From the NCBI GenBank assembly GCA_002269645.1, contig NIVC01000206.1, forward strand, positions 610,803 to 674,802: DNA of 64,000 nt, in the 5' to 3' direction. Source of the DNA: Macrostomum lignano. Taxonomy: Eukaryota. Below are positions 19,630 to 57,961 of the stretch, one piece after another (position 1 is the first letter of the stretch; every line of letters begins with the position of its first letter). Position numbers and translations under genes: made by a program. The notes under the pieces were generated by a model. It saw only the letters and a list, made by a program, of their open reading frames with translations, ran no database searches and was not told the DNA's origin.

Positions 19630-19900
19630 CCGCCCTAATGGCCAGATGTGCAACCGACAGCTCAGCCGCAGCTATTGCGCGGCGCATCTGAAGGCTGCGT
19701 ACGGCTGTTCAGTCCAAGCACTGGGGGGTCGCCACACACAGCCTCAATTACCCATGCTGGCACCCATTTTACAGCTGGGTGAACTGAAGCAATGCAGAGT
19801 TCAGTGTCTTGCTCAAGGACACAGATTGTTTTCAGTGGGATCGGGAATCGAACCCCCGACCTTCAAGTCATGAGTCCGACGCTCTAACCACTAGGCTACA
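19630..19900 (-). mobile_element. tRNA-derived SINE
   Basis: Reverse strand 19900-19833 has a tRNA-like head (tagtggttagagc A-box, ggttcgattcc B-box) with a poorly paired anticodon stem. It is followed by a MIR/CORE-like domain (+ strand CCATTTTACAGCTGGGTGAACTGA...TCTTGCTCAAGGACAC). Confidence 0.6.
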
Positions 19901-20344
19901 ACCCCCAAGAAAAAGAAAGAATTTTTTCAAGAAGAAATATATTTTATTTTATAACCTGAAGTGATTACCGACCAATCGGCTCTCTGAACTACCAGAATCC
20001 ATCATCATCATCATTAATCGACATTTCATGCCGGTATATTTGCATAAAGATCTTTTTTAAAGGGAGCGACAAGTCCAAAAAGGATTCAATATTGTTCTTT
20101 TTGAAAATCAGCGTCCGTGTTATTCGTCAGGTCTGGTGCTTGAGCCATGGACAGCTAAAGCAAAAGGACGTGCTACTCTCACAGAACTCTCACCGAATTA
20201 TCGGAAAATGTGTTTTATCGGGGGTGTACTCATAAGTCTATCTAGTAAGTTCTACTATCTAAGCAAAATTTCTGTGTTTTCTATCTCTATTTTGTGGCGA
20301 AGACCGTCCTTCTGATTTAGCTGTCCTTAGTTTGACCTCTTTAC

Positions 20345-21265
20345 TCAGCACAGCCCCTGCAGCAGAGCAACTTCGGAGTCGCTCAGAGCTCTTTCTGACA
20401 CTCCGAAGCATCTCATGAAGCCTTGGAACACGCGGTTGTGACTGGGATTGCGGCTGACGGCTCCGATCTGCACGCTGCTGCCGAAGTTCGCGCACGAGGT
20501 CAAAGCGGTGGCCGAGCCGCTGGTGGCCTGTCGAGTTCCGTTGACGAGGATCCTGATTTCCGGTGTCTGCTTGTCGTACACCGAGGCAATGTGGGTCCAA
20601 CCGCTGGCCGTGTCGGTGGGTCCGGAAAATATGAGCTTCGCATCCGGGTACAAAACTACGAAGTGTATGGTTGTACTTGTGGGGTGGAGCCAAAACCGAG
20701 TGTGGCATGAAGAAGGCATTGTGAGGCCCTCCAGCAGAGGCATCGCACCTCTCGCTGGGTTGGTGACCTTGACCCACACTGACATGGTGAGGCTGGTGAG
20801 ACACACCGAAGTCAGCTCGTCAATGTTGAACCTCTCTGACACACCCGACTGACCAGTGAAGTTGACGGCGCTGTCCGTGTACTGCATCGGGATGTTCTCC
20901 TGCAGGTCGAGATGGCCGCTGTTCGAGACCGCATTGCGAGTCCGAGTGGCGTTGCTCATGGGCCAGAAGGCGACGAGGCCGAGCTGGTGCAGGGCGCTCC
21001 ACGACTGGCAGTCGGTGTCGTTCGTCAGACTGGCGGTCTGGAGGCTGTCCGACATGTTGCAGACGCCTGCGCGGTGGCTCCAGGCGATGCAGGGACGACG
21101 GAGCTGAGAGCACAGGAAGGCGCACATGCGGGCGCTCGAGGCCGTCAGCGAGTGCTGCGGAGTCTGCGGCACCACGCAGCCGCCGAGCGAGATGCTGCTG
21201 TGCAGCTCGGCGTTCGCACCGAGGCAGAAAAGCAGGCCGAGAAGCAGCGGCAGAAGCAGAAGCAT
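20345..21265 (-). CDS. Secreted PAN/Apple + LamG/pentraxin-like (ConA-fold) lectin, copy 1
   Basis: Intronless 306-aa ORF: hydrophobic signal peptide, CAFLC...CIAW...C Apple-like motif, LVAFWPM, LTMSVWVK, WTHIASVYD, ILVNG, FQGFMRCFGVSERALS. Confidence 0.85.
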   Translation of the reverse strand: MLLLLPLLLGLLFCLGANAELHSSISLGGCVVPQTPQHSLTASSARMCAFLCSQLRRPCIAWSHRAGVCNMSDSLQTASLTNDTDCQSWSALHQLGLVAFWPMSNATRTRNAVSNSGHLDLQENIPMQYTDSAVNFTGQSGVSERFNIDELTSVCLTSLTMSVWVKVTNPARGAMPLLEGLTMPSSCHTRFWLHPTSTTIHFVVLYPDAKLIFSGPTDTASGWTHIASVYDKQTPEIRILVNGTRQATSGSATALTSCANFGSSVQIGAVSRNPSHNRVFQGFMRCFGVSERALSDSEVALLQGLC

Positions 21266-40817: not shown

Positions 40818-41133
40818 ATCAGAGTATTATGATGATAGTATTAATCCATTCTCTGACCAAGTTTATGTGTGAAGACTGGCTTATCATCTATTATATAAGT
40901 CTTGTCTTTTGCACTAAGTTGGTGTGCGCGCCACCTTGGAAGGCTTCTCTATTTGTGCTGCTAATTTATTGTCACTTGGATATCTGGCAACCTATTCTAG
41001 CATTACAGGTTGTTAGTTTTCTGTCCTTTTTAAACAGAAACACCTGTTTTGTATGCCTGATAATCCAATATGACTGCATGCATATTTGGAGATTGCTGTT
41101 AAGATGTTAAATTTGGATCTGAATGACTCTGAT
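40818..41133 (+). ncRNA. SNORD17: Long C/D snoRNA, SNORD17/snR65-like, copy 1
   Basis: C box 40829-40835; TTAATCCATTCT+CTGA (D') complementary to 28S GAAUGGAUUAA (human U3797/yeast U2347 site); D box 41119-41122; terminal stem atcagagt/actctgat; 5' layout matches human SNORD17. Confidence 0.8.
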
Positions 41134-41245
41134 AAACTTGATAGTATCTGTAAATTTTCATATTGCAATTGTATTTAACAATATTATCAAACTAATTATC
41201 AAAAATGCTTGTTTAATTATCAAAAAACCCCAGCCTATTTGAATG

Positions 41246-41320
41246 TATAAATGATGCTACTCAACGTGTTTCGAGTCACAATGACTATGAATTAATAAAA
41301 AGAAACGATAACTGATCAAT
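41246..41320 (+). ncRNA. Weak C/D snoRNA candidate
   Basis: ATGATGC 41251, CTGA 41312; element AAGAAACGATAA loosely complementary to the 18S UUAU(C/G)GUU region; C box imperfect. Confidence 0.35.
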
Positions 41321-41507
41321 GTAATTTTGTGTGCTTATTTACAACTTAATTAATATTTGCAACTATGTCCCTCTAAATATTGTTCTTTGTTTACACACAT
41401 TTGCAGACTTGCTGTTTTTCCCTTGTCACGAGCAATTAACAAAAGCAAATCTGCTTCTGAAAATGTAAGTTCTAAAACATCTTGTACTTTAACAATTTGC
41501 TTTTTTA

Positions 41508-41587
41508 ATTTAATGATGAATACTTGACAAGCATATGTCGGAATGCACTCTTGTGCTTTCTGTAGATACTATTTTCATTCTGAATTT
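41508..41587 (+). ncRNA. SNORD27: C/D snoRNA U27/snR74-like (18S Am27 equivalent)
   Basis: C 41513-41519; GACAAGCATATG (41526-41537) + T + D' CGGA, same register as human U27; D 41580-41583. Confidence 0.8.
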
Positions 41588-41756
41588 TAAATTTATTCAA
41601 TCAACTTTTAGGCATTGGCGCTGTCTCATGTATGGCTTGACTTTGCGAATTTTATTTCAACTAACTTTGCAAATTTCAGGAGCTGGCATACAAAAATCGC
41701 CTACAAAGTCTTACAACATTTATTCGGTGAGTTTTTCTTCGAAGCTGTGAAACATT

Positions 41757-42148
41757 TGTCAGAGAAACGATGATGAATGCTTTAATCCATTCTCTGACTG
41801 AGCTTTTCAAATGTGCTTGAATAGTTATAAAAGGTCTTCCAAATTGGGGTTCTCTTTTTGCCTCTATTTGTTAACCTTTTCTTTCAGGCACAAATTTGAT
41901 TTGCTGGTGTGCGCGCCAGCTGGCTTGAACAGGCTCTCTTAGTGAAGTGCTGACTATTATTGTCACTTTAGGGTTTGCTTCAAGGGTGCTCGCTAAATTC
42001 CTCTTTATAGTCAGAGACTGATTATTTATTATACCGCCTTTGACTTGTTAGTGAGCACTTTAGAAGCGTGACCCGAAAAACGAGTGCTTGCACTTCTTTT
42101 TTGCAGAGCCGTTTGGATGTAAATTATGGTTCTGAGCGTTCTCTGACA
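41757..42148 (+). ncRNA. SNORD17: Long C/D snoRNA, SNORD17-like, copy 2
   Basis: C 41770-41776; same TTAATCCATTCT-CTGA guide; D 42132-42135; stem tgtcagagaa(a)cg / cgttctctgaca. Confidence 0.8.
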
Positions 42149-42201
42149 GCGATTATTAGTATATGGTTAGTTTTTATAGCCTAATTAACGCACCAGTTTG
42201 T

Positions 42202-42282
42202 CATCCACAAATGATGATCAATTTTACACCGTCATGCTGTTTGATTCGCCTGATAATAAAACTATGGCAGCTGATGTGGATG
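42202..42282 (+). ncRNA. C/D snoRNA, TACACCGTCATGCTGT family, copy a
   Basis: C 42211-42217, D' TTGA, D 42271-42274, stem catccaca/tgtggatg. Confidence 0.85.
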
Positions 42283-42399
42283 CTATCAATGTCCTTATGA
42301 CACTATTTAAAATCTAGAATATCGATTTTAAGTTTTATATCAGATTCAGAATCCTTAGAGATAAGGTTAGGTTGTGGCTTGGTTTAAAAAACTGGCTGT

Positions 42400-42477
42400 C
42401 AAAAATGATGATAATTATTCACAAATGTTTGTTTTGAGTTAACATGACAATTTCACATGCATCACCATCTGATGTAG
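42400..42477 (+). ncRNA. SNORD33: C/D snoRNA U33/snR55-like (18S Um1326 equivalent), copy a
   Basis: C 42405-42411; CATGCATCACCAT 42456-42468 + CTGA, complementary to 18S GUGGUGGUGCAUG. Confidence 0.85.
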
Positions 42478-42720
42478 TTTATTGAGTACATTTTAATGAA
42501 CATGTAAGCTATGCTTGCCATTTTATAAAAAGTACAACCTGTCGCCCAAAAACTCTACTTTCATAGGTACTGGTAGTAGATCATTAACAAGTTCTCAAGT
42601 CTACCGGTCCAGTGTTTCATTTTCTAAATTTAAGGTAATTATTAGTTTTGACTGTATTTTGCTTTTTGTGATCATACATAAACATAGCCTGAAATTTTCA
42701 TTTAAGCATGTACGTCGCTT

Positions 42721-42813
42721 GTATTCACCAAAAATGATGACCAATTTTTATACACCGTCATGCTGTTTGACACACTTTTGATAATTAAAAACAATGGCAG
42801 CTGAGGTGAATAC
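42721..42813 (+). ncRNA. C/D snoRNA, TACACCGTCATGCTGT family, copy b
   Basis: C 42734-42740, D 42801-42804, 9-bp stem gtattcacc/ggtgaatac. Confidence 0.85.
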
Positions 42814-43004
42814 AATAGGCATTTCCCTTAACACCTTTGCTGCTCATCATCATTCAGAATCATCGTTTATCTCCATTTTACTAACGAAAGTCTTTGTTCT
42901 TAAATCGATCTTTTAATTAAAAGCAGTCTGAAAAAATCCGAAGCAAATAGTTCTCTTTAGTACGAGTAGAGTCAGTAGCAAGCAAGCAACGTGTCCTCAG
43001 AAAT

Positions 43005-43090
43005 GTAATATGATGTTTGTTATCCCTGGCTTAGTGCAATAAGCTCTATGTAGTAAATACTTTATGCCAACTTCAATGGCTGCTGATTAC
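43005..43090 (+). ncRNA. SNORD1: C/D snoRNA snR38/SNORD1-like (28S Gm4362 equivalent)
   Basis: C ATGATGT 43010; GTTATCCCTG (43019-43028) + G + D' CTTA in snR38 register; D 43083-43086; stem gtaat/attac. Confidence 0.7.
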
Positions 43091-43207
43091 AGTTCTGTAT
43101 ACATACAATGATACGACACTTGCTGCTTTTTTGGTATTCAATTTTTAATTAGGACAATATATACTTTTTTTACTAATACTTAGGACTAGGTCTATTAACT
43201 GCAACTT

Positions 43208-43303
43208 GGGCGTTTTCAATGATGATTGGAATTACCGTCGGAAGTTGGTGTACCAATTTGTGTACGCTGGCGATTCTTTGAAGAAAATTTGCTGTCTGAG
43301 CCC
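43208..43303 (+). ncRNA. SNORD65: C/D snoRNA SNORD65/snR77-like (18S Um627 equivalent)
   Basis: C 43219-43225; TGGAATTACCG + T + D' CGGA, complementary to 18S CGGUAAUUCCA; D 43296-43299; stem gggc/gccc. Confidence 0.85.
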
Positions 43304-43363
43304 TTGATTTGCCATTTTTATGCCTATATTCTATAGTGTAGATAGCCTTGCGTATAAGCCTAC

Positions 43364-43447
43364 TTTTTATGATGATAAATACGTTTGCTTACCTTATCTG
43401 TGATCTCTTAAAGGGACGTGATAAGACACTACAGCGCTCTGATGTAT
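43364..43447 (+). ncRNA. SNORD48: C/D snoRNA U48-like (28S Cm1868 equivalent), copy a
   Basis: C 43369-43375; CTACAGCGCT+CTGA (43439), cf. human U48 CCGCAGCGCTCTGA; upstream TTTGCTTACC pairs with adjacent 28S GGUAAGCAGA. Confidence 0.8.
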
Positions 43448-43635
43448 ATATGTTGATCAGAAGTGTTTTTATATTGTAGAATATTTTATAAATTTCTCTA
43501 ACAATGCCACTTTCTCTTAATTACTACAGGCCTAAGCTGTCCTGGGGCCTTTTAAAATCAATATAAAAGTAAGTGAATTCAAAACCAATAACCAACTCAA
43601 TTTTTGCAGTAATAAGCTAAGCTCTACTATTATGT

Positions 43636-43710
43636 TTTTAATGATGACTATTTCCTTACCTACTATGATTTATTACTAATGTGAATGCAATATTTCCCGA
43701 ATCTGAAATG
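43636..43710 (+). ncRNA. C/D snoRNA to 28S GUAGGUAAGG (+ U50-like D guide), copy a
   Basis: C 43641; TTCCTTACCTACT + D' ATGA (43665); TTTCCCGAAT + D CTGA (43703) in U50/Gm2863 register. Confidence 0.75.
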
Positions 43711-43899
43711 CTAGTCTAAATTACATATATGTAAGCTTAAATTTTAAGAAGTTAATTAAAAAATAAATTTTGTCACTAATTATTTTCAGATTTAGCGATC
43801 CAGTTTGACTCTGATCTAAATTTAAGGTAAGCTTCAATTCACTTTTTTCATATTACTTTGATTTATGTATAACTTTTGTTACCAGCAATAGATTGGCTT

Positions 43900-43977
43900 C
43901 ATTCATGATGACTCAGATTTTACACCGTCATGCTGTATGATCTCGCATGAGTTTAGTTCTATTTGTCTCTGAGTTTT
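43900..43977 (+). ncRNA. C/D snoRNA, TACACCGTCATGCTGT family, copy c
   Basis: C 43905-43911, D' ATGA, D 43969-43972. Confidence 0.8.
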
Positions 43978-44114
43978 AAAGCCTTTATTAATACCTTACA
44001 AACTCTTTAAAACCCCCGGATTTTAAACCCACCGTATTCCAATCCCCGGAACTATTTATTGCATACATCCTTAAATTAAAGTCATACTGAAACAAAAAAT
44101 TTAAAGTTAGCATA

Positions 44115-44184
44115 GAGGTTTGATGAATGTAGTAAATTCGTGTTAAATAAAGATTTAAGACAAGCATTGATTGATCTGACTAAG
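44115..44184 (+). ncRNA. Weak C/D snoRNA candidate
   Basis: TTGATGA 44120, CTGA 44176; TTTAAGACAAGCAT (44154-44167) matches 13/14 to 18S AUGCUUGUCUCAAA, but box spacing is atypical. Confidence 0.25.
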
Positions 44185-44317
44185 CGATAAGATGAGAGAT
44201 TAATGAGCGGCACAAACACCAGAAAAAGCAGACAAACTTCACATGCTTACAGTTACTGTCCTGATTGAGTTACAGAGTTGAGACTTGATATCGAGACACA
44301 AAATAATTCTAAAGAAT

Positions 44318-44468
44318 GGTAGGGTGGCAAGTCAATAGAATTTCAGGTGGGGTGGCAGGTCAATAGAATTTCAGGTAGGGTGGCAGGTCAATAAAATCTC
44401 AGGTAGGTTAGCAGTCAACAGAATTTCAGGTAGGGTGGCAGGTCAATTGAATTTCAGGTAGGGTGGCA
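44318..44468. repeat. 28-bp minisatellite (~5 copies)
   Basis: GGTAGGGTGGCAGGTCAATAGAATTTCA units. Confidence 0.85.
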
Positions 44469-44479
44469 ATTAATCAAAT

Positions 44480-45075
44480 TCTAATACTAATCAAACCCGA
44501 GCAGCACGAGGCAAGACATTATCGTGATGGTGAATCTGACTTCTCTAAGCCACCCGCCATCCGAGGACGCCAACCCAACCAGTTTGAGACCGCCAGATGT
44601 TGGAGGAGGGAATGAGCGACTGATCGTTCGGCAACAAACTTGATGCTAGCGTTAAGCAAAGTTACGGCAGCCAAAGGTTAGTCAATTTTAAAACCGCTTT
44701 TACACATCTCGCCAGATAAGGGAAGGAGAGAGAGGCGAGGGTTGTTACGTCGACAAAGCAGACTAGCTTTAAAAGTGCACAGTGCCGTTCAGGATTGACT
44801 TTATGACTCGAAATTTTACACGCTTGTGTCGGAATAGCTAGAGATTGTTTGTGTCAAATTTTAGTAGGGTTGGTAAAAGTGGAGCGCCGCTATGGAGGAT
44901 TAAGTAAAAAATCCCGCTTTCTTTGCAGCAACTTTGCACTTTAAGGTGGGAATACTGGGAAGACGCTCTCCGTAGTGAGGTTAGGGTGGGTGCAAAACGG
45001 TGTCATTTGGTTGAGCGGTTTGAGAGTCCATGGCGAACAAAATTGGCCACAGACACAGTTTACAGATTTAAGGTA
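44480..45075 (+). mobile_element. Possible non-autonomous Helitron/Helentron-like insertion in a host-gene intron
   Basis: GC-richer island in an AT-rich intron; ends resemble rolling-circle elements (ctaatactaat...aaacccgagcagcacg; ttggttgagcggtttgagag...acagacacag). Confidence 0.3.
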
Positions 45076-45155
45076 TAAATGATGATAGAATATTGACACC
45101 TCTTGTCTGATATTTACTAAGTAAATGCGGAGTTTATTAGCTCTATCTGATCAAG
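45074..45155 (+). ncRNA. SNORD44: Dual-guide C/D snoRNA: U44-like (18S Am166) + snR48-like (yeast 25S G2791 equivalent), copy a
   Basis: C 45079; TGACACCTCTTGT + CTGA (45107); TATTAGCTCTAT + CTGA (45147). Confidence 0.88.
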
Positions 45156-45328
45156 TATTAAGCTCTTTTGTCCTAATAGAAATCGTTAAGAATCGATGCA
45201 AGTTTTCATATTCACTTATTTCATTTTAGAGGACGCTAAAATCCAGCTGGAAAATTGTAAGCCTTCTTAACAGTGCTTCAGGTCAGTTAGCAATGCTTAA
45301 GTATTTTTCCCCATCCTTATTTTACTTT

Positions 45329-45412
45329 TTACAATGATGAATTAATTATAGCATAGTTCATATGAACTGTACCCAGTGTACGGCATGTACAGAATTTTCA
45401 AGCCTGATATTT
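45329..45412 (+). ncRNA. SNORD77: C/D snoRNA U77-like (28S Am1521 equivalent)
   Basis: C 45334; GCATAGTTCA (45351-45360) + T + ATGA; D 45404-45407. Confidence 0.85.
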
Positions 45413-45592
45413 TATCTACCTATTAGCTACCTATTAGTTGTACCTATTTGATAAAACTACATCTTTTTTACAAGTCAGATATTTTTTTAATTTCTTTCCA
45501 GTTTGCCGCGTCAATGAAGTTTCACTGCTACATCCATCCAAGGTAATTTTTATTGCTCAGCTCTATTTAAATATATAACATATCTATAAATG

Positions 45593-45663
45593 CAGTGGCG
45601 GATCCGGGATTTTTTCCGTGAGGTCAGCCGACCCCCTTGATCCCCCTTCTGGATCCGATAGTG
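45593..45663. mobile_element. Degenerate 71-bp hAT-type MITE
   Basis: CAGTGGCGGATCC...GGATCCGATAGTG; flanks tataaatg / tatagata (6/8 TSD match). Confidence 0.55.
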
Positions 45664-45667
45664 TATA

Positions 45668-45743
45668 GATAAGTGATGAAAATAACACATCCGTGTTTGA
45701 TTTGGTCATGATATATAATTTCCATGCATCACCATCTGATTTG
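45668..45743 (+). ncRNA. SNORD33: C/D snoRNA U33-like, copy b
   Basis: GTGATGA 45673; CATGCATCACCAT + CTGA 45736. Confidence 0.85.
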
Positions 45744-45911
45744 CTTTTTTATTGGTATTAATAAAAAAATATGTGCTTTTAAAAAACTCGTCTCTACTGT
45801 AGCCATATTTTCACTTGCCCATTTTAGTGCATTTTTCCCTGGTTGGATATCAAGTCAAGTGTTAACTTGCAAAGTCAGGTAGGCTTGCACTCTTGAACTT
45901 GTGTTTTTGTT

Positions 45912-46079
45912 AGTTGCGACTTTCTCGTTTCAATCACCGACACGCAAAAAATATCTTATTGGTGACTGATTCATTTAGTCGCTAGATTACACTGACAACC
46001 GCATAAAATCCAGAAGCAGAGTAGAGATCTTTTGTTTATCTCCCAAAGTGTCTGCTTTTGATGAGCGCGGATTACATTA
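45912..46079 (+). ncRNA. Candidate box H/ACA snoRNA
   Basis: Hairpin 1 (gcgact/agtcgc; tcaccga/ttggtga), H box AGATTA 45984-45989, hairpin 2 (aaccgc/gcggatt; cagaagcaga/tctgcttttg), ACA at 46074 followed by 3 nt. Confidence 0.45.
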
Positions 46080-46143
46080 CTATTAATAGTAGTATTTAAC
46101 AAAACCGCCCTTTTATAATGGCAGAAATGGCACGCAATGTTAT

Positions 46144-46222
46144 AAATAATGATGATAACCCATAATTCTTCACTTTGAACTGAACAAAAACCAACTGATG
46201 TTAGCACTGGGTTCTGAACTAT
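46144..46222 (+). ncRNA. SNORD37: Dual-guide C/D snoRNA: U37-like (28S Am3697) + SNORD88/snR76-like (28S Cm3680), copy a
   Basis: C 46149; ATTCTTCACTTTGA + A + CTGA (46180); AGCACTGGGTT + CTGA (46214). Confidence 0.9.
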
Positions 46223-46262
46223 CATAATCATGGCTGCCACCTATATTTGTTTAGATTCTTGT

Positions 46263-46350
46263 TAATTATGATGAAATTTTAATTTCCACAGTTCAATCGT
46301 CCGATAATGCTTGATTAGATGCGGACTATTATTAGCTCTACCTGATGATT
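46263..46350 (+). ncRNA. SNORD44: U44-like C/D snoRNA, copy b (D' guide replaced)
   Basis: C 46268; D' CCGA 46301 preceded by CAGTTCAATCGT; TATTAGCTCTAC + CTGA 46342. Confidence 0.85.
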
Positions 46351-46511
46351 AAACAGTTGTTTTGTTATTTAAGTGAGTTTTTGCATCTTTAATTGCAATT
46401 TTCATGTTATTTTTTATTTCAGATGTCTTCTACCGACCAATGTCATCTCGGGGCTTTGAGGGGTAAGGCGTCTTTTTTATCTACTATTAGTAGTATAATT
46501 TTCACTTTCTA

Positions 46512-46617
46512 TTTACATGATGATCTCTATTGATTAGTCTTTCTGAGCTTTATAATTAGTTAATAAACATTTTAACCAATTACAAAACTGCTGACTAACG
46601 CCCCTATCTGATGTGAA
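46512..46617 (+). ncRNA. SNORD80: U80/snR60-like C/D snoRNA (28S Gm1612 equivalent), copy a
   Basis: C 46517; GATTAGTCTTT + CTGA (46543); CGCCCCTAT + CTGA (46608). Confidence 0.85.
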
Positions 46618-46817
46618 TCAGAAAGTGTTAGTTGAAACTTTCATATGGTATTGAAGTATTTCATAAGACACCCGTCTTAAGAAATTCATCCATTCTTTGT
46701 TTTAACACTGTTTTAGAATCCGATTCGTTTTTATGGCAAAATGGCACTGGTTCAACAAGTCTACAGAGCCAACAGGTGAGTTAATAGCCAGAATTATTTT
46801 TATCCGTCCTATGCTGG

Positions 46818-46901
46818 CTGTTATGATGATATTGATCACCTTTGGCTTTTGATAGGTTTCTTTAAATGAAAATTATCTACCATGCATCACCATCTGAGAA
46901 A
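46818..46901 (+). ncRNA. SNORD33: C/D snoRNA U33-like, copy c
   Basis: C 46823; CATGCATCACCAT + CTGA 46894. Confidence 0.85.
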
Positions 46902-47075
46902 TTTTTCTAACATTAACCAAAATCTGAGCCAATGCCAACTCCTTATGTGTCCAGAAATTCTACAGAAATTCTCCATCTCTACTCTGCATTCCAGTTGGCC
47001 CGGTCAAATTTCAAACAAGAGTTAACAGGTAAAACTGACATTGTTTTAGTTTCTAACATCCCATATACAATTCAG

Positions 47076-47162
47076 CATCCATTAATGATGATTTCATTTT
47101 ACACCGTCATGCTGTTTGATTTCAATAATGAAATTTAACCATATTGGCAGCTGAGATGGATG
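47076..47162 (+). ncRNA. C/D snoRNA, TACACCGTCATGCTGT family, copy d
   Basis: C 47085, D 47151, stem catcca/tggatg. Confidence 0.85.
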
Positions 47163-47361
47163 CTCTACGGTGTACATTTGGTCTTATAGCATATTTAAGA
47201 AAATTATACTCGTAGATAGCTAATTTGACTGCGTGTGTTCTAAGACGAATTTCTCTAAGTTTCTTCTTATCGTGTAACTTATAAATGGATAGTTTTGAGC
47301 AAACAAGCTGGCAATGGTGTAATAATCTTATCTATCAGATAGAATACACGCTTGGCTATTT

Positions 47362-47443
47362 TTATCATGACGATCCAGCAATTTAGTATCAACCTTATCA
47401 GTGTATTGGATACAATATAAAGCACTACAGCGCTCTGTCGTCT
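47362..47443 (+). ncRNA. SNORD48: U48-like snoRNA, copy b, degenerate boxes (possible pseudo-snoRNA)
   Basis: CACTACAGCGCT guide retained, but C = ATGACGA (47367) and D = CTGT (47435). Confidence 0.5.
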
Positions 47444-47642
47444 AGATAAAGCTGGTATTTTAGCTCCTATTCGAGGCCTAAGTGTTTTGCTTAACGTATC
47501 TTCCTTATTTTATGTTGGTGCCTCCCTAAAATCCTCAGATTATGTGACGCACCTGATGCTGCATGATTCAGTTTACTTGTAAGTGACTGCCAATATGCTC
47601 GTAATATAATTAAATAAATCTATAATTTGTATACCAGAAACT

Positions 47643-47730
47643 AATTAGTGATGAATAATTCCTTACCTACTATGATAATGTTTTAGAAAACTCCAGTTGT
47701 GATTAAAAAATATCCCTAATCTGACTTTAT
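47643..47730 (+). ncRNA. C/D snoRNA to 28S GUAGGUAAGG, copy b
   Basis: GTGATGA 47648; TTCCTTACCTACT + ATGA; D 47721 (U50-like guide diverged to TATCCCTAAT). Confidence 0.75.
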
Positions 47731-47902
47731 TACTAATTATAGTATTTTACGCTACTATCTTAGGCATTTTTTTCAATTACTTTAAGTAGTCACTTTCCTC
47801 TCAAAATTTTAGTACATATTCTTGCTTGGCTGGCTAGTGCTGCAACTAATTTAGCAAGGTAAGATCAGTAGGACCTTCTGTAGAGGCTTATGTTATATTA
47901 AG

Positions 47903-47980
47903 AATCCGTGATGATAACTCAGAATTCTTCACTTTGACCTGATTATTGACAATGTGATGATAGCACTGGGTTCTGAATTG
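47903..47980 (+). ncRNA. SNORD37: Dual-guide U37 + SNORD88-like snoRNA, copy b
   Basis: GTGATGA 47908; D' CTGA 47939; C' GTGATGA; AGCACTGGGTT + CTGA 47973. Confidence 0.9.
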
Positions 47981-48033
47981 TTTTTAATATAACTAGCCTC
48001 TAGTTTTTTTAAATCAGATTGCTTTTTTAATTA

Positions 48034-48118
48034 GCTACATGATGACAAAAACAATTTGACACCTCTTGTCCGATGTAAATAACATAAATGCGGACTGTTA
48101 TTAGATATACCTGAGAAA
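48034..48118 (+). ncRNA. U44/snR48-type snoRNA, copy c (18S guide decayed)
   Basis: C 48039; TGACACCTCTTGT + CCGA 48070; D guide TATTAGATATAC (2 changes) + CTGA 48111. Confidence 0.85.
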
Positions 48119-48303
48119 TCATTTCTAGGACTCTAGTAAAATGCGCAAATAATAAGCTACTATTGTTTAAGTCAATCAATTAAATCTTTTCAGCAGCGAA
48201 TGCGGCTGATTGCTTCAAAATATGTCGAATTCAATTTTTTTCGCAGGTAAGCGTCTCTTATCAGTTGTTTGATTCTGAACTCTTAAGCAAGCTACTCTAC
48301 CAC

Positions 48304-48378
48304 ATGTAATGATGATTTATATGGATTAGTCTTTCTTAGTTCTCAAATGTGCAGACAAGCGCCCCTATCTGACTACTG
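48304..48378 (+). ncRNA. SNORD80: U80-like snoRNA, copy b
   Basis: C 48309; GATTAGTCTTT + CTTA; CGCCCCTAT + CTGA 48369. Confidence 0.85.
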
Positions 48379-48557
48379 TCAATTATAACTATGCAAATTA
48401 GCTCATTTAAGTAGTGTGCCAGACCTTTTATTGTCTGATTGTTAATTTACCATTTTATTTTTGCAGGAGTTCAATCAACTCCAGTTTGTGCGTTAAGATC
48501 TGCAGCTTTGAGGTGAGACAATGCTATTTCTAACCCAATAAATCAGGAGTTCACGTT

Positions 48558-48649
48558 GTAAAATGATGAGACATTTTTTGATCAACCATATGAGTCAATG
48601 TAGCTATTGGCTAAATGAATTGCGTTTTTTAAACTTCTCTCTGATTTAT
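48558..48649 (+). ncRNA. SNORD7: mgU6-47-like snoRNA with extra 18S 5'-end guide, copy a
   Basis: C 48563; GATCAACCA + T + ATGA (48590); TTAAACTTCTCT + CTGA (48641), one mismatch to U6. Confidence 0.75.
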
Positions 48650-48682
48650 TGCCCCTTTCCAATATCCTACTAACCAGCTGTA

Positions 48683-48770
48683 CATCAATGATGAGACATT
48701 TCCTGGATCAACCATATGAGCCTGACTATTGTTAGGTCTATGAATGGTTTCTAATCTTCTCTCTGAATGA
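48683..48770 (+). ncRNA. SNORD7: mgU6-47-like snoRNA with extra 18S 5'-end guide, copy b
   Basis: C 48688; GGATCAACCA + T + ATGA (48716); CTAATCTTCTCT + CTGA (48763), 12/12 to U6 AGAGAAGAUUAG, fifth nt pairs with A47. Confidence 0.88.
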
Positions 48771-49319
48771 TAGCAAATATCTACTAGGTCTGTTACTACA
48801 GGATTAAGCTGGGTAACTTTTAAGCGTCACTTGCTTCTCTTTACATTTCAGAGCCTCGAAATTGCTTCTGGAGATTTCCTTTTTTATATTATCCGGCTCT
48901 ACAAAACAATTGTGATAGACATTTTATTTGATTTGATTTGATTAAAGTCAAATTTTGACAGCAAATTGTAACTAATTTCTGTTATAATATATTTATTTAC
49001 TGAGCCTATACGCTTGCTAACAAACGGTCTTTCTCTGTTTTCGCTGTTTCATGCATTTAAAGAGTTTATTAAATACAAATACGTAATATGATCTTGAAAT
49101 CATGATATTCGTGATTTGATTACACCCTGAGAACATTCTGTCACTTTCAATAAATTTAAGGCATATTAGGATAGAGGATAGAAAAATGCAAGGCCCGTAA
49201 CAGAAACTAAATATGTACAGAACGTGAAGGATTGTGCAGTTCTGAAAGCTAGTGTGTGAGGGAGCTGTAGTCGGGTAGTAGGTAGTAAGGGTGGAAAATG
49301 TAGGTTAGTAGTCATACAT

Positions 49320-49471
49320 GCGCAACCTTGGGAATCACTCGGCCGTTTCTATTGGCAACACATGTAAGTCGCTATTGGCTGAGAGCAGTCGCGTGACTAC
49401 TATTCCGTCCAATAGCGGCTTACATGTGTGTGTTGCCAATAGAAACGGCCGGGTGAATCCCTAGGTTGCGC
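49320..49471. repeat. ~60-bp-arm inverted repeat (hairpin, MITE-like)
   Basis: 49320-49378 is the reverse complement of 49409-49471; ~30-nt loop; no clear TSD. Confidence 0.8.
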
Positions 49472-49508
49472 CCAAGCATGGTAGTAGTGTTAAAGACGCA
49501 GGTTTAGG

Positions 49509-49660
49509 GTAGCAGTGTAAAGGGAGGCAGGTGTATGTAGCAGTGTAAAGGGAGGCAGGTGTATGTAGCAGTGTAAAGGGAGGCAGGTGTAGGGTAGCAG
49601 CGTGAAGGGAGGCAGGTGTAGGTAGCAGTGTAAAGGGAGGCAGGTGTAGGTAGCAGCGTT
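49509..49660. repeat. 28-bp minisatellite (~5 copies)
   Basis: TAGCAGTGTAAAGGGAGGCAGGTGTA(T/G)G units. Confidence 0.85.
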
Positions 49661-49750: not shown

Positions 49751-50299
49751 ATGTTTCGCAAATTCGACGACAAAGAGAACATCTCGTCCGTAAACAACGC
49801 CAAGAACAGTGTCCAGAAGGGTATCAGAAACACCATCCTGACGCAGTATCCGGGATGCGCAGATTACGTTGACCAGATTCTACCCAAGAAGGAAACGCTC
49901 AGCGTTGTCAAATGCCACGAGCACATCGAGCTGTACGCCAACCCGGCTGGCGAGGTGCTGTTCTTCAGGCAGCGCGACTCGCCGCTGTATCCCAGCTTGA
50001 AACTGCTGCACAGATATCCGTTCATGCTGCCGCACATGCAGGCGGACAAGGGCGCTATCAAATTCCTGCTGAACGGGTCCAATGTGATGTGCCCGGGCCT
50101 GACCACGCCTGGCGGCCGGCTGTCCCAGGTGCCAGCTAGCACAGTTGTTGCCGTCATGGCCGAAGGCAAACAGCACGCGTTAGCAATCGGCTTGACGGCG
50201 ATGAGCGCGGACGAGATTGCCAGCAAGAACAAAGGAGTTGGCATCGAGACTGTGCACTGTTTAAATGACGGCCTGTGGCGGCTGCGTTCTGTCAAGTAG
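49751..50299 (+). CDS. MCTS1: Malignant T-cell-amplified sequence 1 (MCT-1/Tma20; PUA-domain ribosome recycling/reinitiation factor)
   Basis: 182-aa intronless ORF: MFRKFDDKEN...VKCHEHIEL...DKGAIKFLLNGSNVMCPGLT...GKQHALAIG...HCLNDGLW. Confidence 0.97.
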   Translation: MFRKFDDKENISSVNNAKNSVQKGIRNTILTQYPGCADYVDQILPKKETLSVVKCHEHIELYANPAGEVLFFRQRDSPLYPSLKLLHRYPFMLPHMQADKGAIKFLLNGSNVMCPGLTTPGGRLSQVPASTVVAVMAEGKQHALAIGLTAMSADEIASKNKGVGIETVHCLNDGLWRLRSVK

Positions 50300-53396: not shown

Positions 53397-54323
53397 ATGA
53401 GTTCCAGCATCTTAACTGGACTGACTGCGGCGATGCTGCTGCCACTCCTGGTGCACTGCGGCAATGGAACCATGCACAGCAGCATCTCGCTCGGCGGCTG
53501 CGTGGTGCCGCAGACTCCGCAGCACTCGCTGGCGGCCTCGAGCGCCCGCATGTGCGCCTTCCTGTGCTCTCAGCTCCGTCGTCCTTGCATCGCCTGGAGC
53601 CACCGCGCAGGCGTCTGCAACATGTCGGACAGCCTCCAGACCGCCAGTCTGACGAACGACACCGACTGCCAGGCGTGGAGCGCCCTGCGCCAGCTCGGCC
53701 TCGTCGCCTTCTGGCCCATGAGCAACGTCACTCGGACTCGCAATGCGGTCTCGAACAGCGGCCATCTCGACCTGCAGGAGAACATCCCGATGCAGTACAC
53801 GGACAGCGCCGTCAACTTCACTGGTCAGTCGGGTGTGTCAGAGCGGTTCAACATTGACGAGCTGACTTCGGTGTGTCTCACCAGCCTCACCATGTCAGTG
53901 TGGGTCAAGGTCACCAACCCAGCGAGAGGTTCGATGCCTCTGCTGGAGGGCCTCACAATGCCTTCTTCATACCACACTCGGTTTTGGCTTCATCCTACAA
54001 CTACCGACATCGAGTTCACCGTTGCATTCAAGGTCCGAGTGTCCGGACCCACCGACACGGCCAGCGGTTGGACCCACATCGCCGCGGTGTACGACAAGCA
54101 GACACCGGAAGTCAGGATCCTCGTCAACGGAACTCGACAGGCCACCAGCGGCTCGGCCACCGCTTTGACCTCGTGCGCGGACTTCGGCAGCAGCGTGCAG
54201 ATCGGAGCCGTCAGCCGCAATGCCGATCACAAACGCGTGTTCCAAGGCTTCATGAGATGCTTCGGAGTGTCAGAGAGAGCTCTGAGCGACTCTGAAATTG
54301 CCGCTTTGATCCAGCTGTGCTAA
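53397..54323 (+). CDS. Secreted PAN/Apple + LamG/pentraxin-like lectin, copy 2
   Basis: 308-aa intronless ORF, near-identical to copy 1 except the signal peptide and one central segment. Confidence 0.85.
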   Translation: MSSSILTGLTAAMLLPLLVHCGNGTMHSSISLGGCVVPQTPQHSLAASSARMCAFLCSQLRRPCIAWSHRAGVCNMSDSLQTASLTNDTDCQAWSALRQLGLVAFWPMSNVTRTRNAVSNSGHLDLQENIPMQYTDSAVNFTGQSGVSERFNIDELTSVCLTSLTMSVWVKVTNPARGSMPLLEGLTMPSSYHTRFWLHPTTTDIEFTVAFKVRVSGPTDTASGWTHIAAVYDKQTPEVRILVNGTRQATSGSATALTSCADFGSSVQIGAVSRNADHKRVFQGFMRCFGVSERALSDSEIAALIQLC

Positions 54324-56439: not shown

Positions 56440-56771
56440 CTACTGAAAGTAGATCAGCTGTCATCCAAAAATATTTTTGCTTCTTAGCAACAATTTTGCC
56501 GCCATGCATCATCCATGACCTTAGAAAAAGTATACGAGCCATGTGTTCTCAATCCATCCATTATAGTTTAAGTAGAAAAAAAATCCCGCACAACTTGCAC
56601 AACTTGCATGTTCAGTGATTTCATGAAAAATTTCGTACATCAATTTACCAGAACTGGACACAAGAGTGGAGCATGGTTAATGGAGTTCTGCATGTTGACA
56701 GCCAGCCAAGATAAATTTGCTGACTAAAATCTCAGTCTCACTTTGGGTCTTCGATTTTTGTTTGGATTGCG

Positions 56772-57345
56772 ATGCTTCTGCTTCTGCCGCTGCTTCTCGG
56801 CCTGCTTTTCTGCATCGGTGCGAACGCCGAGCTGCACAGCACTCGCTGGCGGCCTCGAGCGCCCGCATGTGCGCCTTCCTGTGCTCTCAGCTCCGTCGTC
56901 CCTGCATCGCCTGGAGCCACCGCGCAGGCGTCTGCAACATGTCGGACAGCCTCCAGACCGCCAGTCTGACGAACGACACCGACTGCCAGTCGTGGAGCGC
57001 CCTGCGCCAGCGCGGTCTCGTCGCCTTCTGGCCCATGAGCAACGCCACTCGGACTCGCAATGCGGTCTCGAACAGCGGCCATCTCGACCTGCAGGAGAAC
57101 ATCCCGATGCAGTACACGGACAGCGCCGTCAACTTCACTGGTCAGTCGGGTGTGTCAGAGCGGTTCAACATTGACCAGCTGACTTCGGTGTGTCTCGACA
57201 GTCTCACCATGTCAGTGTGGGTCAAGGTCACCAATGCGTCAAGGGGTTCGATGCCTCTGCTGGAGGGCCTCACAATGCCTTCTTCATACCACACTCGATT
57301 GTGCTTCGTCCTTCAACTGCCGACATCATGTTCGCCCGAATGCAT
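56772..57345 (+). pseudogene. PAN + LamG lectin, copy 3 (pseudogene)
   Basis: 43-nt frameshifting deletion at CAGCA microhomology after ELHS, 1-nt deletion near 57303, C-terminal third missing. Confidence 0.8.
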
Positions 57346-57961
57346 ATCACTTTTATATTGTTTTAAGCAGTCGTCTTCAGAACCAAGCATACATCTACAT
57401 GTACATCACTAGAACTATAACGCCTTTATGTACACGTCTATGTTTTGGCTTCGTCTGTCTGCCCATTTCCAGATATGATTATCTATCTGCTTCTAAAAAG
57501 ACATTTAGACGCGATCGTACGCCCGAGAAGGGCTCATGACGTTGAAAGTTAAAAATTTAGTAGTGTAGCATAAAATCACTATATATTTTTTAGTTTTATT
57601 CGTCAGACCCTACTTACAGAAAGCAATGAGAATTTAATAAAATCGCAATCAATTATTTTATGCTTGGATTTGGAGCATAGCATTCAACTATTAGGTAGTA
57701 TTCTATAATATTAATCAGAAGCATCAATACGACAGCTCCCTCAAACAGGATAAAAACCGACACCGTACAAACGCAAGCGGTCCCTTTTGAGTACAAAATT
57801 CTTTTTCGCCTCAGTTTACACGTCTCAAAGCAATTTGAGACTTTAATGACTAACAATATATGCACGAATAACAGTGACACTCGTCAGACTGACAGATGGC
57901 ATGCACCTCTCCAACAGGTGACCCTCATCTGTCTGGCTTGAGCTAAACATCCATCTGTCCA

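What the first reader, a model, noticed from the sequence alone, without database searches (positions are those of the whole stretch)
42202..47162. Four-copy snoRNA family with an invariant 16-nt guide, probably to the 28S GTPase centre
Seen: copies at 42202, 42721, 43900 and 47076 diverge elsewhere but keep TACACCGTCATGCTGT before D'; three also keep TGGCAG before D. Established: the best match I can recall is 13/14 to metazoan 28S ACAGCAGGACGGUG (H42-43, uL11/GTPase-associated centre), predicting Cm in ACAG(C)AG. I do not know this as a human/yeast site. The mismatch and the non-pairing 5' TA are invariant, so the true target may be a divergent rRNA or a non-rRNA (orphan guide).
Basis: partly seen in the sequence, partly recalled or inferred. 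Interest (0 to 1): 0.72.

Follow-up and report, generated by a model that had tools for sequence, protein, structure and literature searches.

The report
Four-copy flatworm box C/D snoRNA family
Four diverged copies of a small nucleolar guide RNA in the flatworm Macrostomum lignano share one invariant 16-base guide whose best rRNA match is the large subunit's GTPase-associated centre; this is an ordinary kind of gene aimed at a site not reported as modified in human rRNA.

Summary
TACACCGTCATGCTGT occurs exactly four times on the + strand (0 of 100 shuffles). Each copy sits in a unit with box C, a D'-like (U/A)UGA, a C'-like box and box D. Copies 1, 2 and 4 have 8-10 bp terminal stems of different sequence. 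Outside boxes and guide the copies are 37-65% identical. The window is from Macrostomum lignano. The units are four of about 25 box C/D-like units in a multi-intron array (about 40.8-48.8 kb) with other paralog sets. Against two homeologous contigs, units diverge 1.6% versus 4.9% for flanks; copies 2 and 4 are unchanged, and copy 3 looks like it is decaying. No Rfam family reaches its threshold (best SNORD34, 24.7 vs 38 bits, different guide). I verified that it is the 5' strand of the closing stem plus H43 of the GTPase-associated centre (E. coli 1051-1108 domain). The mismatch lies in the core pairing zone, and a Fasciola 28S keeps the canonical G. I could not reach M. lignano rRNA, so the target stays probable, not shown. 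Verdict: a new member of a known kind, of moderate interest.

The parts
42202..42282 (+). Copy 1. 5' stem CATCCACA 42202-42209; box C ATGATGA 42211-42217; guide 42225-42240; D' TTGA 42241-42244; C' TGATAA 42251-42256; TGGCAG 42265-42270; box D CTGA 42271-42274; 3' stem TGTGGATG 42275-42282.
   Evidence: The fold keeps an 8-bp terminal stem (-18.5 kcal/mol, z -1.2). This copy is absent from homeolog L001, and L002 starts downstream of it.
42720..42814 (+). Copy 2. 5' stem TGTATTCACC 42720-42729; box C 42734-42740; guide 42751-42766; D' TTGA 42767-42770; C' TGATAA 42779-42784; TGGCAG 42795-42800; box D 42801-42804; 3' stem GGTGAATACA 42805-42814.
   Evidence: Terminal stem in the fold, z -2.1. 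It shows 0 differences from L002 over 42721-42812, while the flanks differ by 4.9%.
43895..43982 (+). Copy 3, the weakest. GGCTT 43895-43899; box C 43905-43911; guide 43921-43936; D' ATGA 43937-43940; C'-like TGAGTT 43948-43953; box D 43969-43972; AAGCC 43978-43982; no TGGCAG.
   Evidence: The fold of 43897-43979, which excludes most of the outer GGCTT/AAGCC pairing, shows no terminal stem (z -0.14). The L002 homeolog has the guide as TACACCGTCATGtTGT (43933 C>T). It is probably a decaying copy.
47075..47163 (+). Copy 4. 5' stem GCATCCAT 47075-47082; box C 47085-47091; guide 47100-47115; D' TTGA 47116-47119; C'-like TGAAAT 47129-47134; TGGCAG 47145-47150; box D 47151-47154; 3' stem ATGGATGC 47156-47163.
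   Evidence: It has the best fold (-24.5 kcal/mol, z -2.8). It is identical in L001 and L002 and is the only copy kept in L001.
40826..48770 (+). Array of about 25 box C/D-like units on the + strand, separated by short exon-like segments with GT...AG borders (inferred multi-snoRNA host gene or genes). Other paralog sets: SNORD33/snR55-like x3 (42398, 45669, 46816), SNORD37-like x2 (46148, 47907), Z102/R77-like x3 (45072, 46263, 48036), a SNORD27-like unit (41508), and others.
   Evidence: Sub-threshold Rfam hits. There are 11-14 nt exact antisense matches to heterologous 18S/28S directly upstream of D'/D boxes. No ORF of 110 aa or more lies between 35702 and 49751. Units are conserved relative to flanks. 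Splicing and expression were not tested.

Best explanation
The four units are paralogous, intron-encoded box C/D snoRNAs of Macrostomum lignano. They lie in a multi-snoRNA, apparently non-coding host-gene array. After splicing, each intron would be trimmed to a 75-95 nt RNA held by its terminal stem and C/D kink-turn and bound by Snu13, Nop56, Nop58 and fibrillarin; this is inferred from the class. The invariant 16 nt upstream of the D' box is the antisense element. Its cognate site is most likely the 5' strand of the closing stem plus H43 of the GTPase-associated centre of 28S rRNA (ACAGCAGGACGGUG in other eukaryotes). There the 5th-nucleotide rule predicts 2'-O-methylation of the C in ACAG[C], equivalent to E. 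coli 23S C1051/1052 and roughly human 28S C1952-1953. The invariant A opposite the canonical G is best explained if the M. lignano base pair at that position is U-A instead of G-C. That pair is A-U in E. coli, so it does covary. This would give a perfect duplex of at least 14 bp. Copies 1, 2 and 4 look functional, copy 3 looks like it is decaying, and the multiplicity comes from tandem duplication within the array, as for its neighbours.
For: - Exact 16-mer x4, against 0 of 100 shuffles.
- Box order, spacing and different-sequence terminal stems.
- Only 37-65% identity outside boxes and guide.
- Units diverge 1.6% against 4.9% for flanks relative to L002 (p = 7e-10); copies 2 and 4 have zero differences.
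- Neighbouring units carry 11-14 nt exact antisense matches to rRNA next to D'/D boxes.
- The best rRNA site in two rDNAs is the GTPase-centre strand at 13/14, with 56 of 20000 shuffles reaching that.
- No other site has 9 or more contiguous pairs anchored at D'.
- The mismatched duplex is still -22.3 kcal/mol, stronger than the perfect duplexes of neighbouring guides at -12.9 to -19.1.
- Site identity was verified against the annotated E. coli 23S 58-mer and by a consensus fold; the mismatch pair is G-C in eukaryotes and A-U in E. coli.
Against: - M. lignano rRNA was never seen.
- The only flatworm datum, Fasciola 28S primers, has the canonical G.
- The mismatch is at position 7, inside the 3rd-11th core pairing zone (PMC7229835).
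- The invariant 5' UA, and conservation beyond position 11, are not explained by the canonical site.
- This family is the only one in the array whose guide lacks an exact match of 11 nt or more to heterologous rRNA.
- The first 120 metagenome matches to the exact complement were not rRNA.
- No expression, fibrillarin-binding or methylation data were available.
- L001 and L002 share one haplotype over 45.2-49.7 kb, so they are not independent witnesses for copy 4.
Confidence: 0.6

Rival explanations
1. These are real, expressed box C/D snoRNAs, but the true target is elsewhere, and the GTPase-centre resemblance is coincidental or ancestral. Candidates are a lineage-specific rRNA segment (expansion segment, ETS or ITS), an snRNA, the spliced-leader RNA, a tRNA or an mRNA that carries the perfect 16-nt complement. 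On this reading the family is an orphan or retargeted guide.
For: All 16 nt, including the mismatch A and the 5' UA, are invariant in four old paralogs. The mismatch sits in the core pairing zone. Fasciola keeps the canonical G. Every other guide in the array that was matched has 11-14 exact nt.
Against: A 13/14 match in rRNA arises in only 0.28% of shuffled guides. No complement occurs elsewhere in the window within 2 mismatches. No snRNA match could be recalled from memory (not tested). Most conserved guides in such host genes target rRNA (general knowledge).
Confidence: 0.2
2. The snoRNAs bind the canonical GTPase-associated centre with the built-in A.G mismatch, and they act mainly as a folding chaperone or timer for this three-way junction during pre-60S assembly, with little or no methylation. 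TGGCAG might help by pairing with CUGCCG on the opposite strand of the same stem.
For: The mismatched duplex is very stable (-22.3 kcal/mol). Conservation extends beyond the 10-bp window used in catalysis. UGGCAG is complementary to CUGCCG at LSU 1389, the partner strand of the closing stem.
Against: The hexamer match is not significant: 15% of random hexamers find a site in the 70-nt domain. The hexamer also matches 18S position 14 and pairs internally with the guide's 3' end. There is no precedent at this site, and there is no direct evidence.
Confidence: 0.12
3. The units are non-functional relics of duplicated introns, and the shared 16-mer has been kept by gene conversion rather than selection.
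For: Copy 3 lacks a terminal stem in the fold and TGGCAG, and it has a guide SNP in L002. Homeolog L001 has lost copies 1-3 without obvious consequence.
Against: Boxes, spacing and compensatory stems are intact in copies 1, 2 and 4. Copies 2 and 4 have zero substitutions against 4-5% in flanks. Conversion limited to exactly the guide, between 37-65% identical paralogs, is implausible.
Confidence: 0.04

Closest known systems
SNORD34 / U34 (Rfam RF00147; yeast counterpart snR62, from memory)
   Same: It is the best Rfam hit for copies 1 and 2. It has the same layout, with the guide in the 5' half ending in ...UGU directly before a UUGA D' box, a similar length and a terminal stem (alignment).
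   Different: Scores are 24.7 and 21.7 bits against a gathering score of 38. The SNORD34 consensus guide, ACCUACAUUGU, differs from ACACCGUCAUGCUGU and pairs with a different 28S segment. Separate units with a CCTTACCTAC guide lie at about 43638 and 47650; I recall, but did not test, that this pairs next to the U34 target region.
Multi-snoRNA non-coding host genes (vertebrate GAS5, UHG/SNHG1 type; from general knowledge)
   Same: There is one C/D unit per short intron, tiny exons, no long ORF, many units on one strand, and several paralog sets.
   Different: This is a flatworm locus with no sequence relationship to the vertebrate genes. Exon structure, transcription and any trans-splicing were not examined.
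Orphan box C/D snoRNAs, such as the tandemly repeated SNORD115/116 type
   Same: It is a multi-copy family with an invariant antisense element and no perfect rRNA complement in the rRNAs examined.
   Different: Here there is a statistically supported near-perfect rRNA site, only four copies, and they are embedded among ordinary rRNA guides.

Membership tests
Box C/D snoRNA (class) | Box C (RUGAUGA) near the 5' end and box D (CUGA) near the 3' end | tested here: met
   ATGATGA and CTGA are present in all four units at the expected ends.
Box C/D snoRNA (class) | Short terminal stem bringing boxes C and D together | tested here: met
   Stems of 8, 10 and 8 bp with different sequences in copies 1, 2 and 4. 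Copy 3 has only a 5-bp distal GGCTT/AAGCC pairing.
Box C/D snoRNA (class) | Internal D' and C' boxes with a 3-9 nt loop between them | tested here: met
   D' is UUGA (AUGA in copy 3). C'-like boxes are TGATAA, TGATAA, TGAGTT and TGAAAT, 6-9 nt downstream. They are degenerate, as is usual in eukaryotes.
Box C/D snoRNA (class) | Antisense element of at least 10 nt directly upstream of D or D', pairing without mismatch over positions 3-11 with a cellular RNA | tested here: inconclusive
   The best site in heterologous rRNA is 13/14 with the mismatch at position 7. M. lignano rRNA was not available.
Box C/D snoRNA (class) | Stable expression and association with fibrillarin, Nop56, Nop58 and Snu13 | not testable with these tools
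   No transcript or RNP data could be reached. Purifying selection relative to the homeologs is indirect support.
SNORD34 (Rfam RF00147) | Score at or above the curated gathering threshold (38 bits) | tested here: not met
   24.7 bits for copy 1 and 21.7 bits for copy 2.
SNORD34 (Rfam RF00147) | Guide matching the family consensus ACCUACAUUGU | tested here: not met
   The guide here is ACACCGUCAUGCUGU. The cmscan alignment needs a substitution pair and a 2-nt insertion.
Any other Rfam 15 family | Gathering-score match anywhere in 42202-47163 | tested here: not met
   Only a tRNA at 19836-19905 passes gathering in the whole window. All C/D hits in the array are below threshold.

The most novel reading that the evidence does not exclude
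M. lignano 28S keeps the canonical GTPase-associated-centre sequence, and this family engages it through a selected, mismatched 6+7 bp duplex. That would give either a lineage-specific Cm in the closing stem of the uL11/P-stalk rRNA domain, made by a guide that breaks the core-pairing rule, or a methylation-independent snoRNA chaperone of that domain. A further alternative is that the family is a true orphan guide with a non-rRNA target.
Probability: 0.2. Interest if true: 0.6.

Novelty: new member of a known kind. Interest (0 to 1): 0.35.

Why it matters
If the prediction holds, a free-living flatworm 2'-O-methylates, or at least contacts with a snoRNA, the closing stem of the GTPase-associated centre, the rRNA platform for uL11 and the P-stalk that translational GTPases use. 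No such site is named in the main text of the human survey I checked, and I recall none in the yeast maps (not checked). That would add a lineage-specific modification in a functionally central rRNA element. It would also give a natural test of how strictly core pairing is required. M. lignano is a transgenic, RNAi-amenable model, so the prediction can be tested directly. Otherwise, the locus is a useful first annotation of a large flatworm snoRNA host-gene array. I found no paper describing Macrostomum snoRNAs: the eight papers that contain both words are on other topics, judging by title and abstract.

Tried and rejected
- Exact-complement scan of JGI metagenome contigs. The scan was truncated, so this is a weak negative.
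- L105, where a C-box-like ATGATG sits upstream of the same 16-mer. Rejected: the contig is 63% GC and has no D box.
- Fishing for M. lignano rDNA through the spurious 28S antisense ORF (RRT15, 'senescence-associated protein'). It gave 4845 hits, with the top 120 mostly fungal and none from Macrostomum. L001's gene table shows that only deposited annotation is indexed for this assembly, so I dropped further ORF baits. A bait spanning the GTPase centre would in any case hide the key G>U change, which is synonymous in the only open frame.
- Literature string searches for the guide, its complement and the canonical-site guide found only unrelated primers, apart from the Fasciola 28S set. Searches for Macrostomum + snoRNA and for GTPase-associated centre + snoRNA + RiboMeth-seq found nothing relevant.
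- TGGCAG as a second guide or clamp: not significant.
- A memory-based idea that the target might be the L1-stalk-side GGUGUAGAAUAAG region or the post-sarcin-ricin-loop GGUGUA region: not supported by scans of real rDNA.
- The 2.9-kb extra segment in L001 and L002: no snoRNA-like hit and no meaningful ORF.
Full report
OBSERVATION. The 16-mer TACACCGTCATGCTGT occurs four times, always on the + strand, at 42225, 42751, 43921 and 47100. Nothing else in the window comes within two mismatches on either strand, and none of 100 dinucleotide-preserving shuffles gave four matches. Reading the sequence and aligning the four units shows the same architecture each time:
- a 5' stem arm, then ATGATGA (box C);
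- a 7-10 nt A/T-rich spacer, then the 16-mer;
- TTGA (ATGA in copy 3) as the D' box;
- 6-9 nt further on, a degenerate C' box (TGATAA, TGATAA, TGAGTT, TGAAAT);
- a 14-17 nt spacer, CTGA (box D), and a 3' stem arm.

TGGCAG immediately precedes box D in copies 1, 2 and 4. The terminal stems differ in sequence: CATCCACA/TGTGGATG, TGTATTCACC/GGTGAATACA and GCATCCAT/ATGGATGC. Folding recovers them. Outside boxes and guide the copies are 37-65% identical.

ORGANISM AND LOCUS. An intronless MCTS1-like ORF at 49751-50299 is encoded identically on two contigs of NCBI assembly GCA_002269645.1. The literature identifies that assembly as Macrostomum lignano Mlig_3_7. Neither contig is collinear with the window, so they are homeologous or allelic versions, 94-97% identical across the snoRNA region. 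L001 lacks window 41918-45181, which includes copies 1-3. L002 starts inside the array and carries copies 2, 3 and 4. Both carry an extra 2.9 kb after window position 47526, with no snoRNA-like or coding signal.

The four units sit among about 25 box C/D-like units on the + strand between about 40.8 and 48.8 kb, separated by short exon-like pieces with GT...AG borders. Sub-threshold Rfam hits name several of them: SNORD27-, SNORD33/snR55-, SNORD37- and Z102/R77-like. Many carry 11-14 nt exact antisense matches to heterologous 18S/28S directly upstream of a D'/D box. Several of these families are also present in two or three copies, so a multi-copy family with a fixed guide is the norm in this locus, not an exception.

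SELECTION. Against L002, the units differ at 1.6% of positions and the rest of the region at 4.9% (Fisher p = 7e-10). Against L001 the figures are 2.0% and 3.2% (p = 0.03). Copies 2 and 4 show no difference at all. Copy 3 has one difference, inside the guide (C>T at 43933). It also lacks TGGCAG, and the fold of 43897-43979, which excludes most of its outer GGCTT/AAGCC pairing, shows no terminal stem (z -0.14). I read copy 3 as decaying. L001 and L002 share a haplotype over 45.2-49.7 kb, so they count as one witness for copy 4.

KNOWN FAMILIES. At gathering thresholds Rfam 15 finds only a tRNA in the whole window. For these units the best hit is SNORD34, at 24.7 and 21.7 bits against a threshold of 38. 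The alignment shows shared boxes and a shared ...UGU|UUGA junction but a different guide. Literature searches for the guide and its complement found only unrelated primers, and the eight papers that contain both 'Macrostomum' and 'snoRNA' are on other topics, judging by title and abstract.

TARGET. I obtained real rDNA through the spurious 28S antisense ORF. One source is a wasp contig (L123). The other is complete rDNA units of an unidentified eukaryote (L124-L126), which Rfam annotates as LSU, 5.8S and SSU. Scanning both strands, the best site for the guide in each is ACAGCAGGACGGTGGC followed by CATGGAAGTCGG. That is 13 Watson-Crick pairs, arranged as 6 + 7 around one A.G mismatch, with the guide's 5' UA unpaired.

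Only 56 of 20000 shuffled guides reach 13/14 anywhere in 18S, 5.8S or 28S. No other site offers 9 or more contiguous pairs anchored at D'. The mismatched duplex (-22.3 kcal/mol) is more stable than the perfect duplexes of neighbouring guides (-12.9 to -19.1).

To place the site, I located the classical L11-binding 58-mer in an annotated E. coli 23S gene, at positions 1050-1107, and aligned and folded it with the eukaryotic segment. Eukaryotic GCAGG pairs with CCUGC as the closing stem of that domain. The guide would cover ACA, this 5' strand, and the 5' strand of H43. The 5th-nucleotide rule, with D' = UUGA as in SNORD34, selects the C of ACAG[C]. That C is equivalent to E. coli C1051/1052. 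It lies 94-95 nt 3' of the SNORD38 site, at roughly human 28S C1952-1953. A human survey names no site in the 19xx-22xx range in its main text.

THE MISMATCH. The mismatch lies at position 7 from D'. A published analysis places the selected core of snoRNA-rRNA duplexes at positions 3-11 and finds that pairing outside it is not selected (PMC7229835). So with a canonical 28S this would be an atypical methylation guide, and the invariance of positions 12-16 would also be unusual. The mismatched G pairs with C64 of the alignment, and that pair is A-U in E. coli, so a U-A pair in M. lignano is conceivable and would give a perfect 14-mer. Against this, the Fasciola hepatica '28S/IGS' LAMP primers read CCAGACAGCAGGACGGTG|GCCATGGAAGTTGGAATCCGCT, which has the canonical G. 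The first 120 metagenome matches to the exact complement were not rRNA. I could not obtain M. lignano rRNA with the available collections.

TGGCAG. The hexamer is complementary to CUGCCG on the opposite strand of the same closing stem (LSU 1389 in L126). However, 15% of random hexamers find a Watson-Crick or G.U site within the 70-nt domain. It also matches CTGCCA at 18S position 14. In the predicted folds of copies 1, 2 and 4, GGCAGC pairs with GCUGUU at the 3' end of the D' guide. Its role is unresolved.

VERDICT. This is a genuine, selected, previously undescribed box C/D snoRNA family, and thus a new member of a known kind. Its cognate site is probably the GTPase-associated centre of 28S rRNA. 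Whether it methylates there, through a lineage-specific U-A pair or despite a core mismatch, or instead serves another RNA, needs the species' rRNA sequence, RiboMeth-seq and expression data. Confidence that these are functional C/D snoRNAs is about 0.9. Confidence in the full model including the target is about 0.6.

Noticed in passing
window 40826-48770 (+): The array holds about 25 C/D-like units in several paralog sets, each with its own invariant guide. Sets: CATGCATCACCAT|CTGA x3 (42398, 45669, 46816); TTCTTCACTTTGA(C) x2 (46148, 47907); TATTAGCTCTA x2 plus a third R77-like unit (45072, 46263, 48036); TTAATCCATTC x2 (40829, 41769); GATTAGTCTTTC x2 (46518, 48308); CCTTACCTAC x2 (43638, 47650); and a pair at 48564/48689. 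None reaches an Rfam gathering score.
   Followed up: partly
window 41918-45181 and 47526, versus L001 and L002: The locus varies structurally between homeologs or alleles. L001 replaces 3.26 kb, containing ten units including family copies 1-3, with about 205 nt. L001 and L002 both have a 2.9-kb insertion in the intron after copy 4, with no snoRNA-like hit or sizeable ORF.
   Followed up: yes
window 42235-42241 with 42266-42271 (same register in copies 2 and 4): [quoted passage not shown] It is seen in the three copies that keep TGGCAG and not in copy 3. It could explain the hexamer's conservation, or it could be a folding artefact.
   Followed up: partly
window 40920-40990 and 41905-42060: A repeated motif, GGTGTGCGCGCCA...(A)TTATTGTCACT, lies outside any C/D unit. 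The second half is an 11-13 nt exact antisense match to SSU 461-473 of L126. It may be another kind of small RNA, such as H/ACA or U14-like.
   Followed up: no
window 19836-19905 (-): The only Rfam gathering-level hit in the window is a tRNA (34.6 bits) whose T-arm is shortened in the alignment.
   Followed up: no
window 49751-50299 (+): An intronless 182-aa MCTS1-like ORF (Pre-PUA and PUA domains) lies immediately downstream of the snoRNA array. It is identical on two other contigs of the assembly.
   Followed up: partly
window 20345-21265 (-), 53397-54323 (+), 56717-57412 (+): There are three copies (306, 308 and a truncated 231 aa) of an ORF with a signal-peptide-like N-terminus that share long identical stretches. 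One is inverted relative to the other two, so a gene family is duplicated across the window.
   Followed up: no
window 44300-44480, 49480-49660 and 49300-49470: There are tandem repeats of about 31 nt (GGTAGGGTGGCAGGTCAATAGAATTTCA-like) and about 30 nt (GCAGTGTAAAGGGAGGCAGGTGTA-like), plus a long inverted repeat just upstream of the MCTS1-like ORF. Much of the rest of the window is microsatellite-rich, GC-rich repeat.
   Followed up: no
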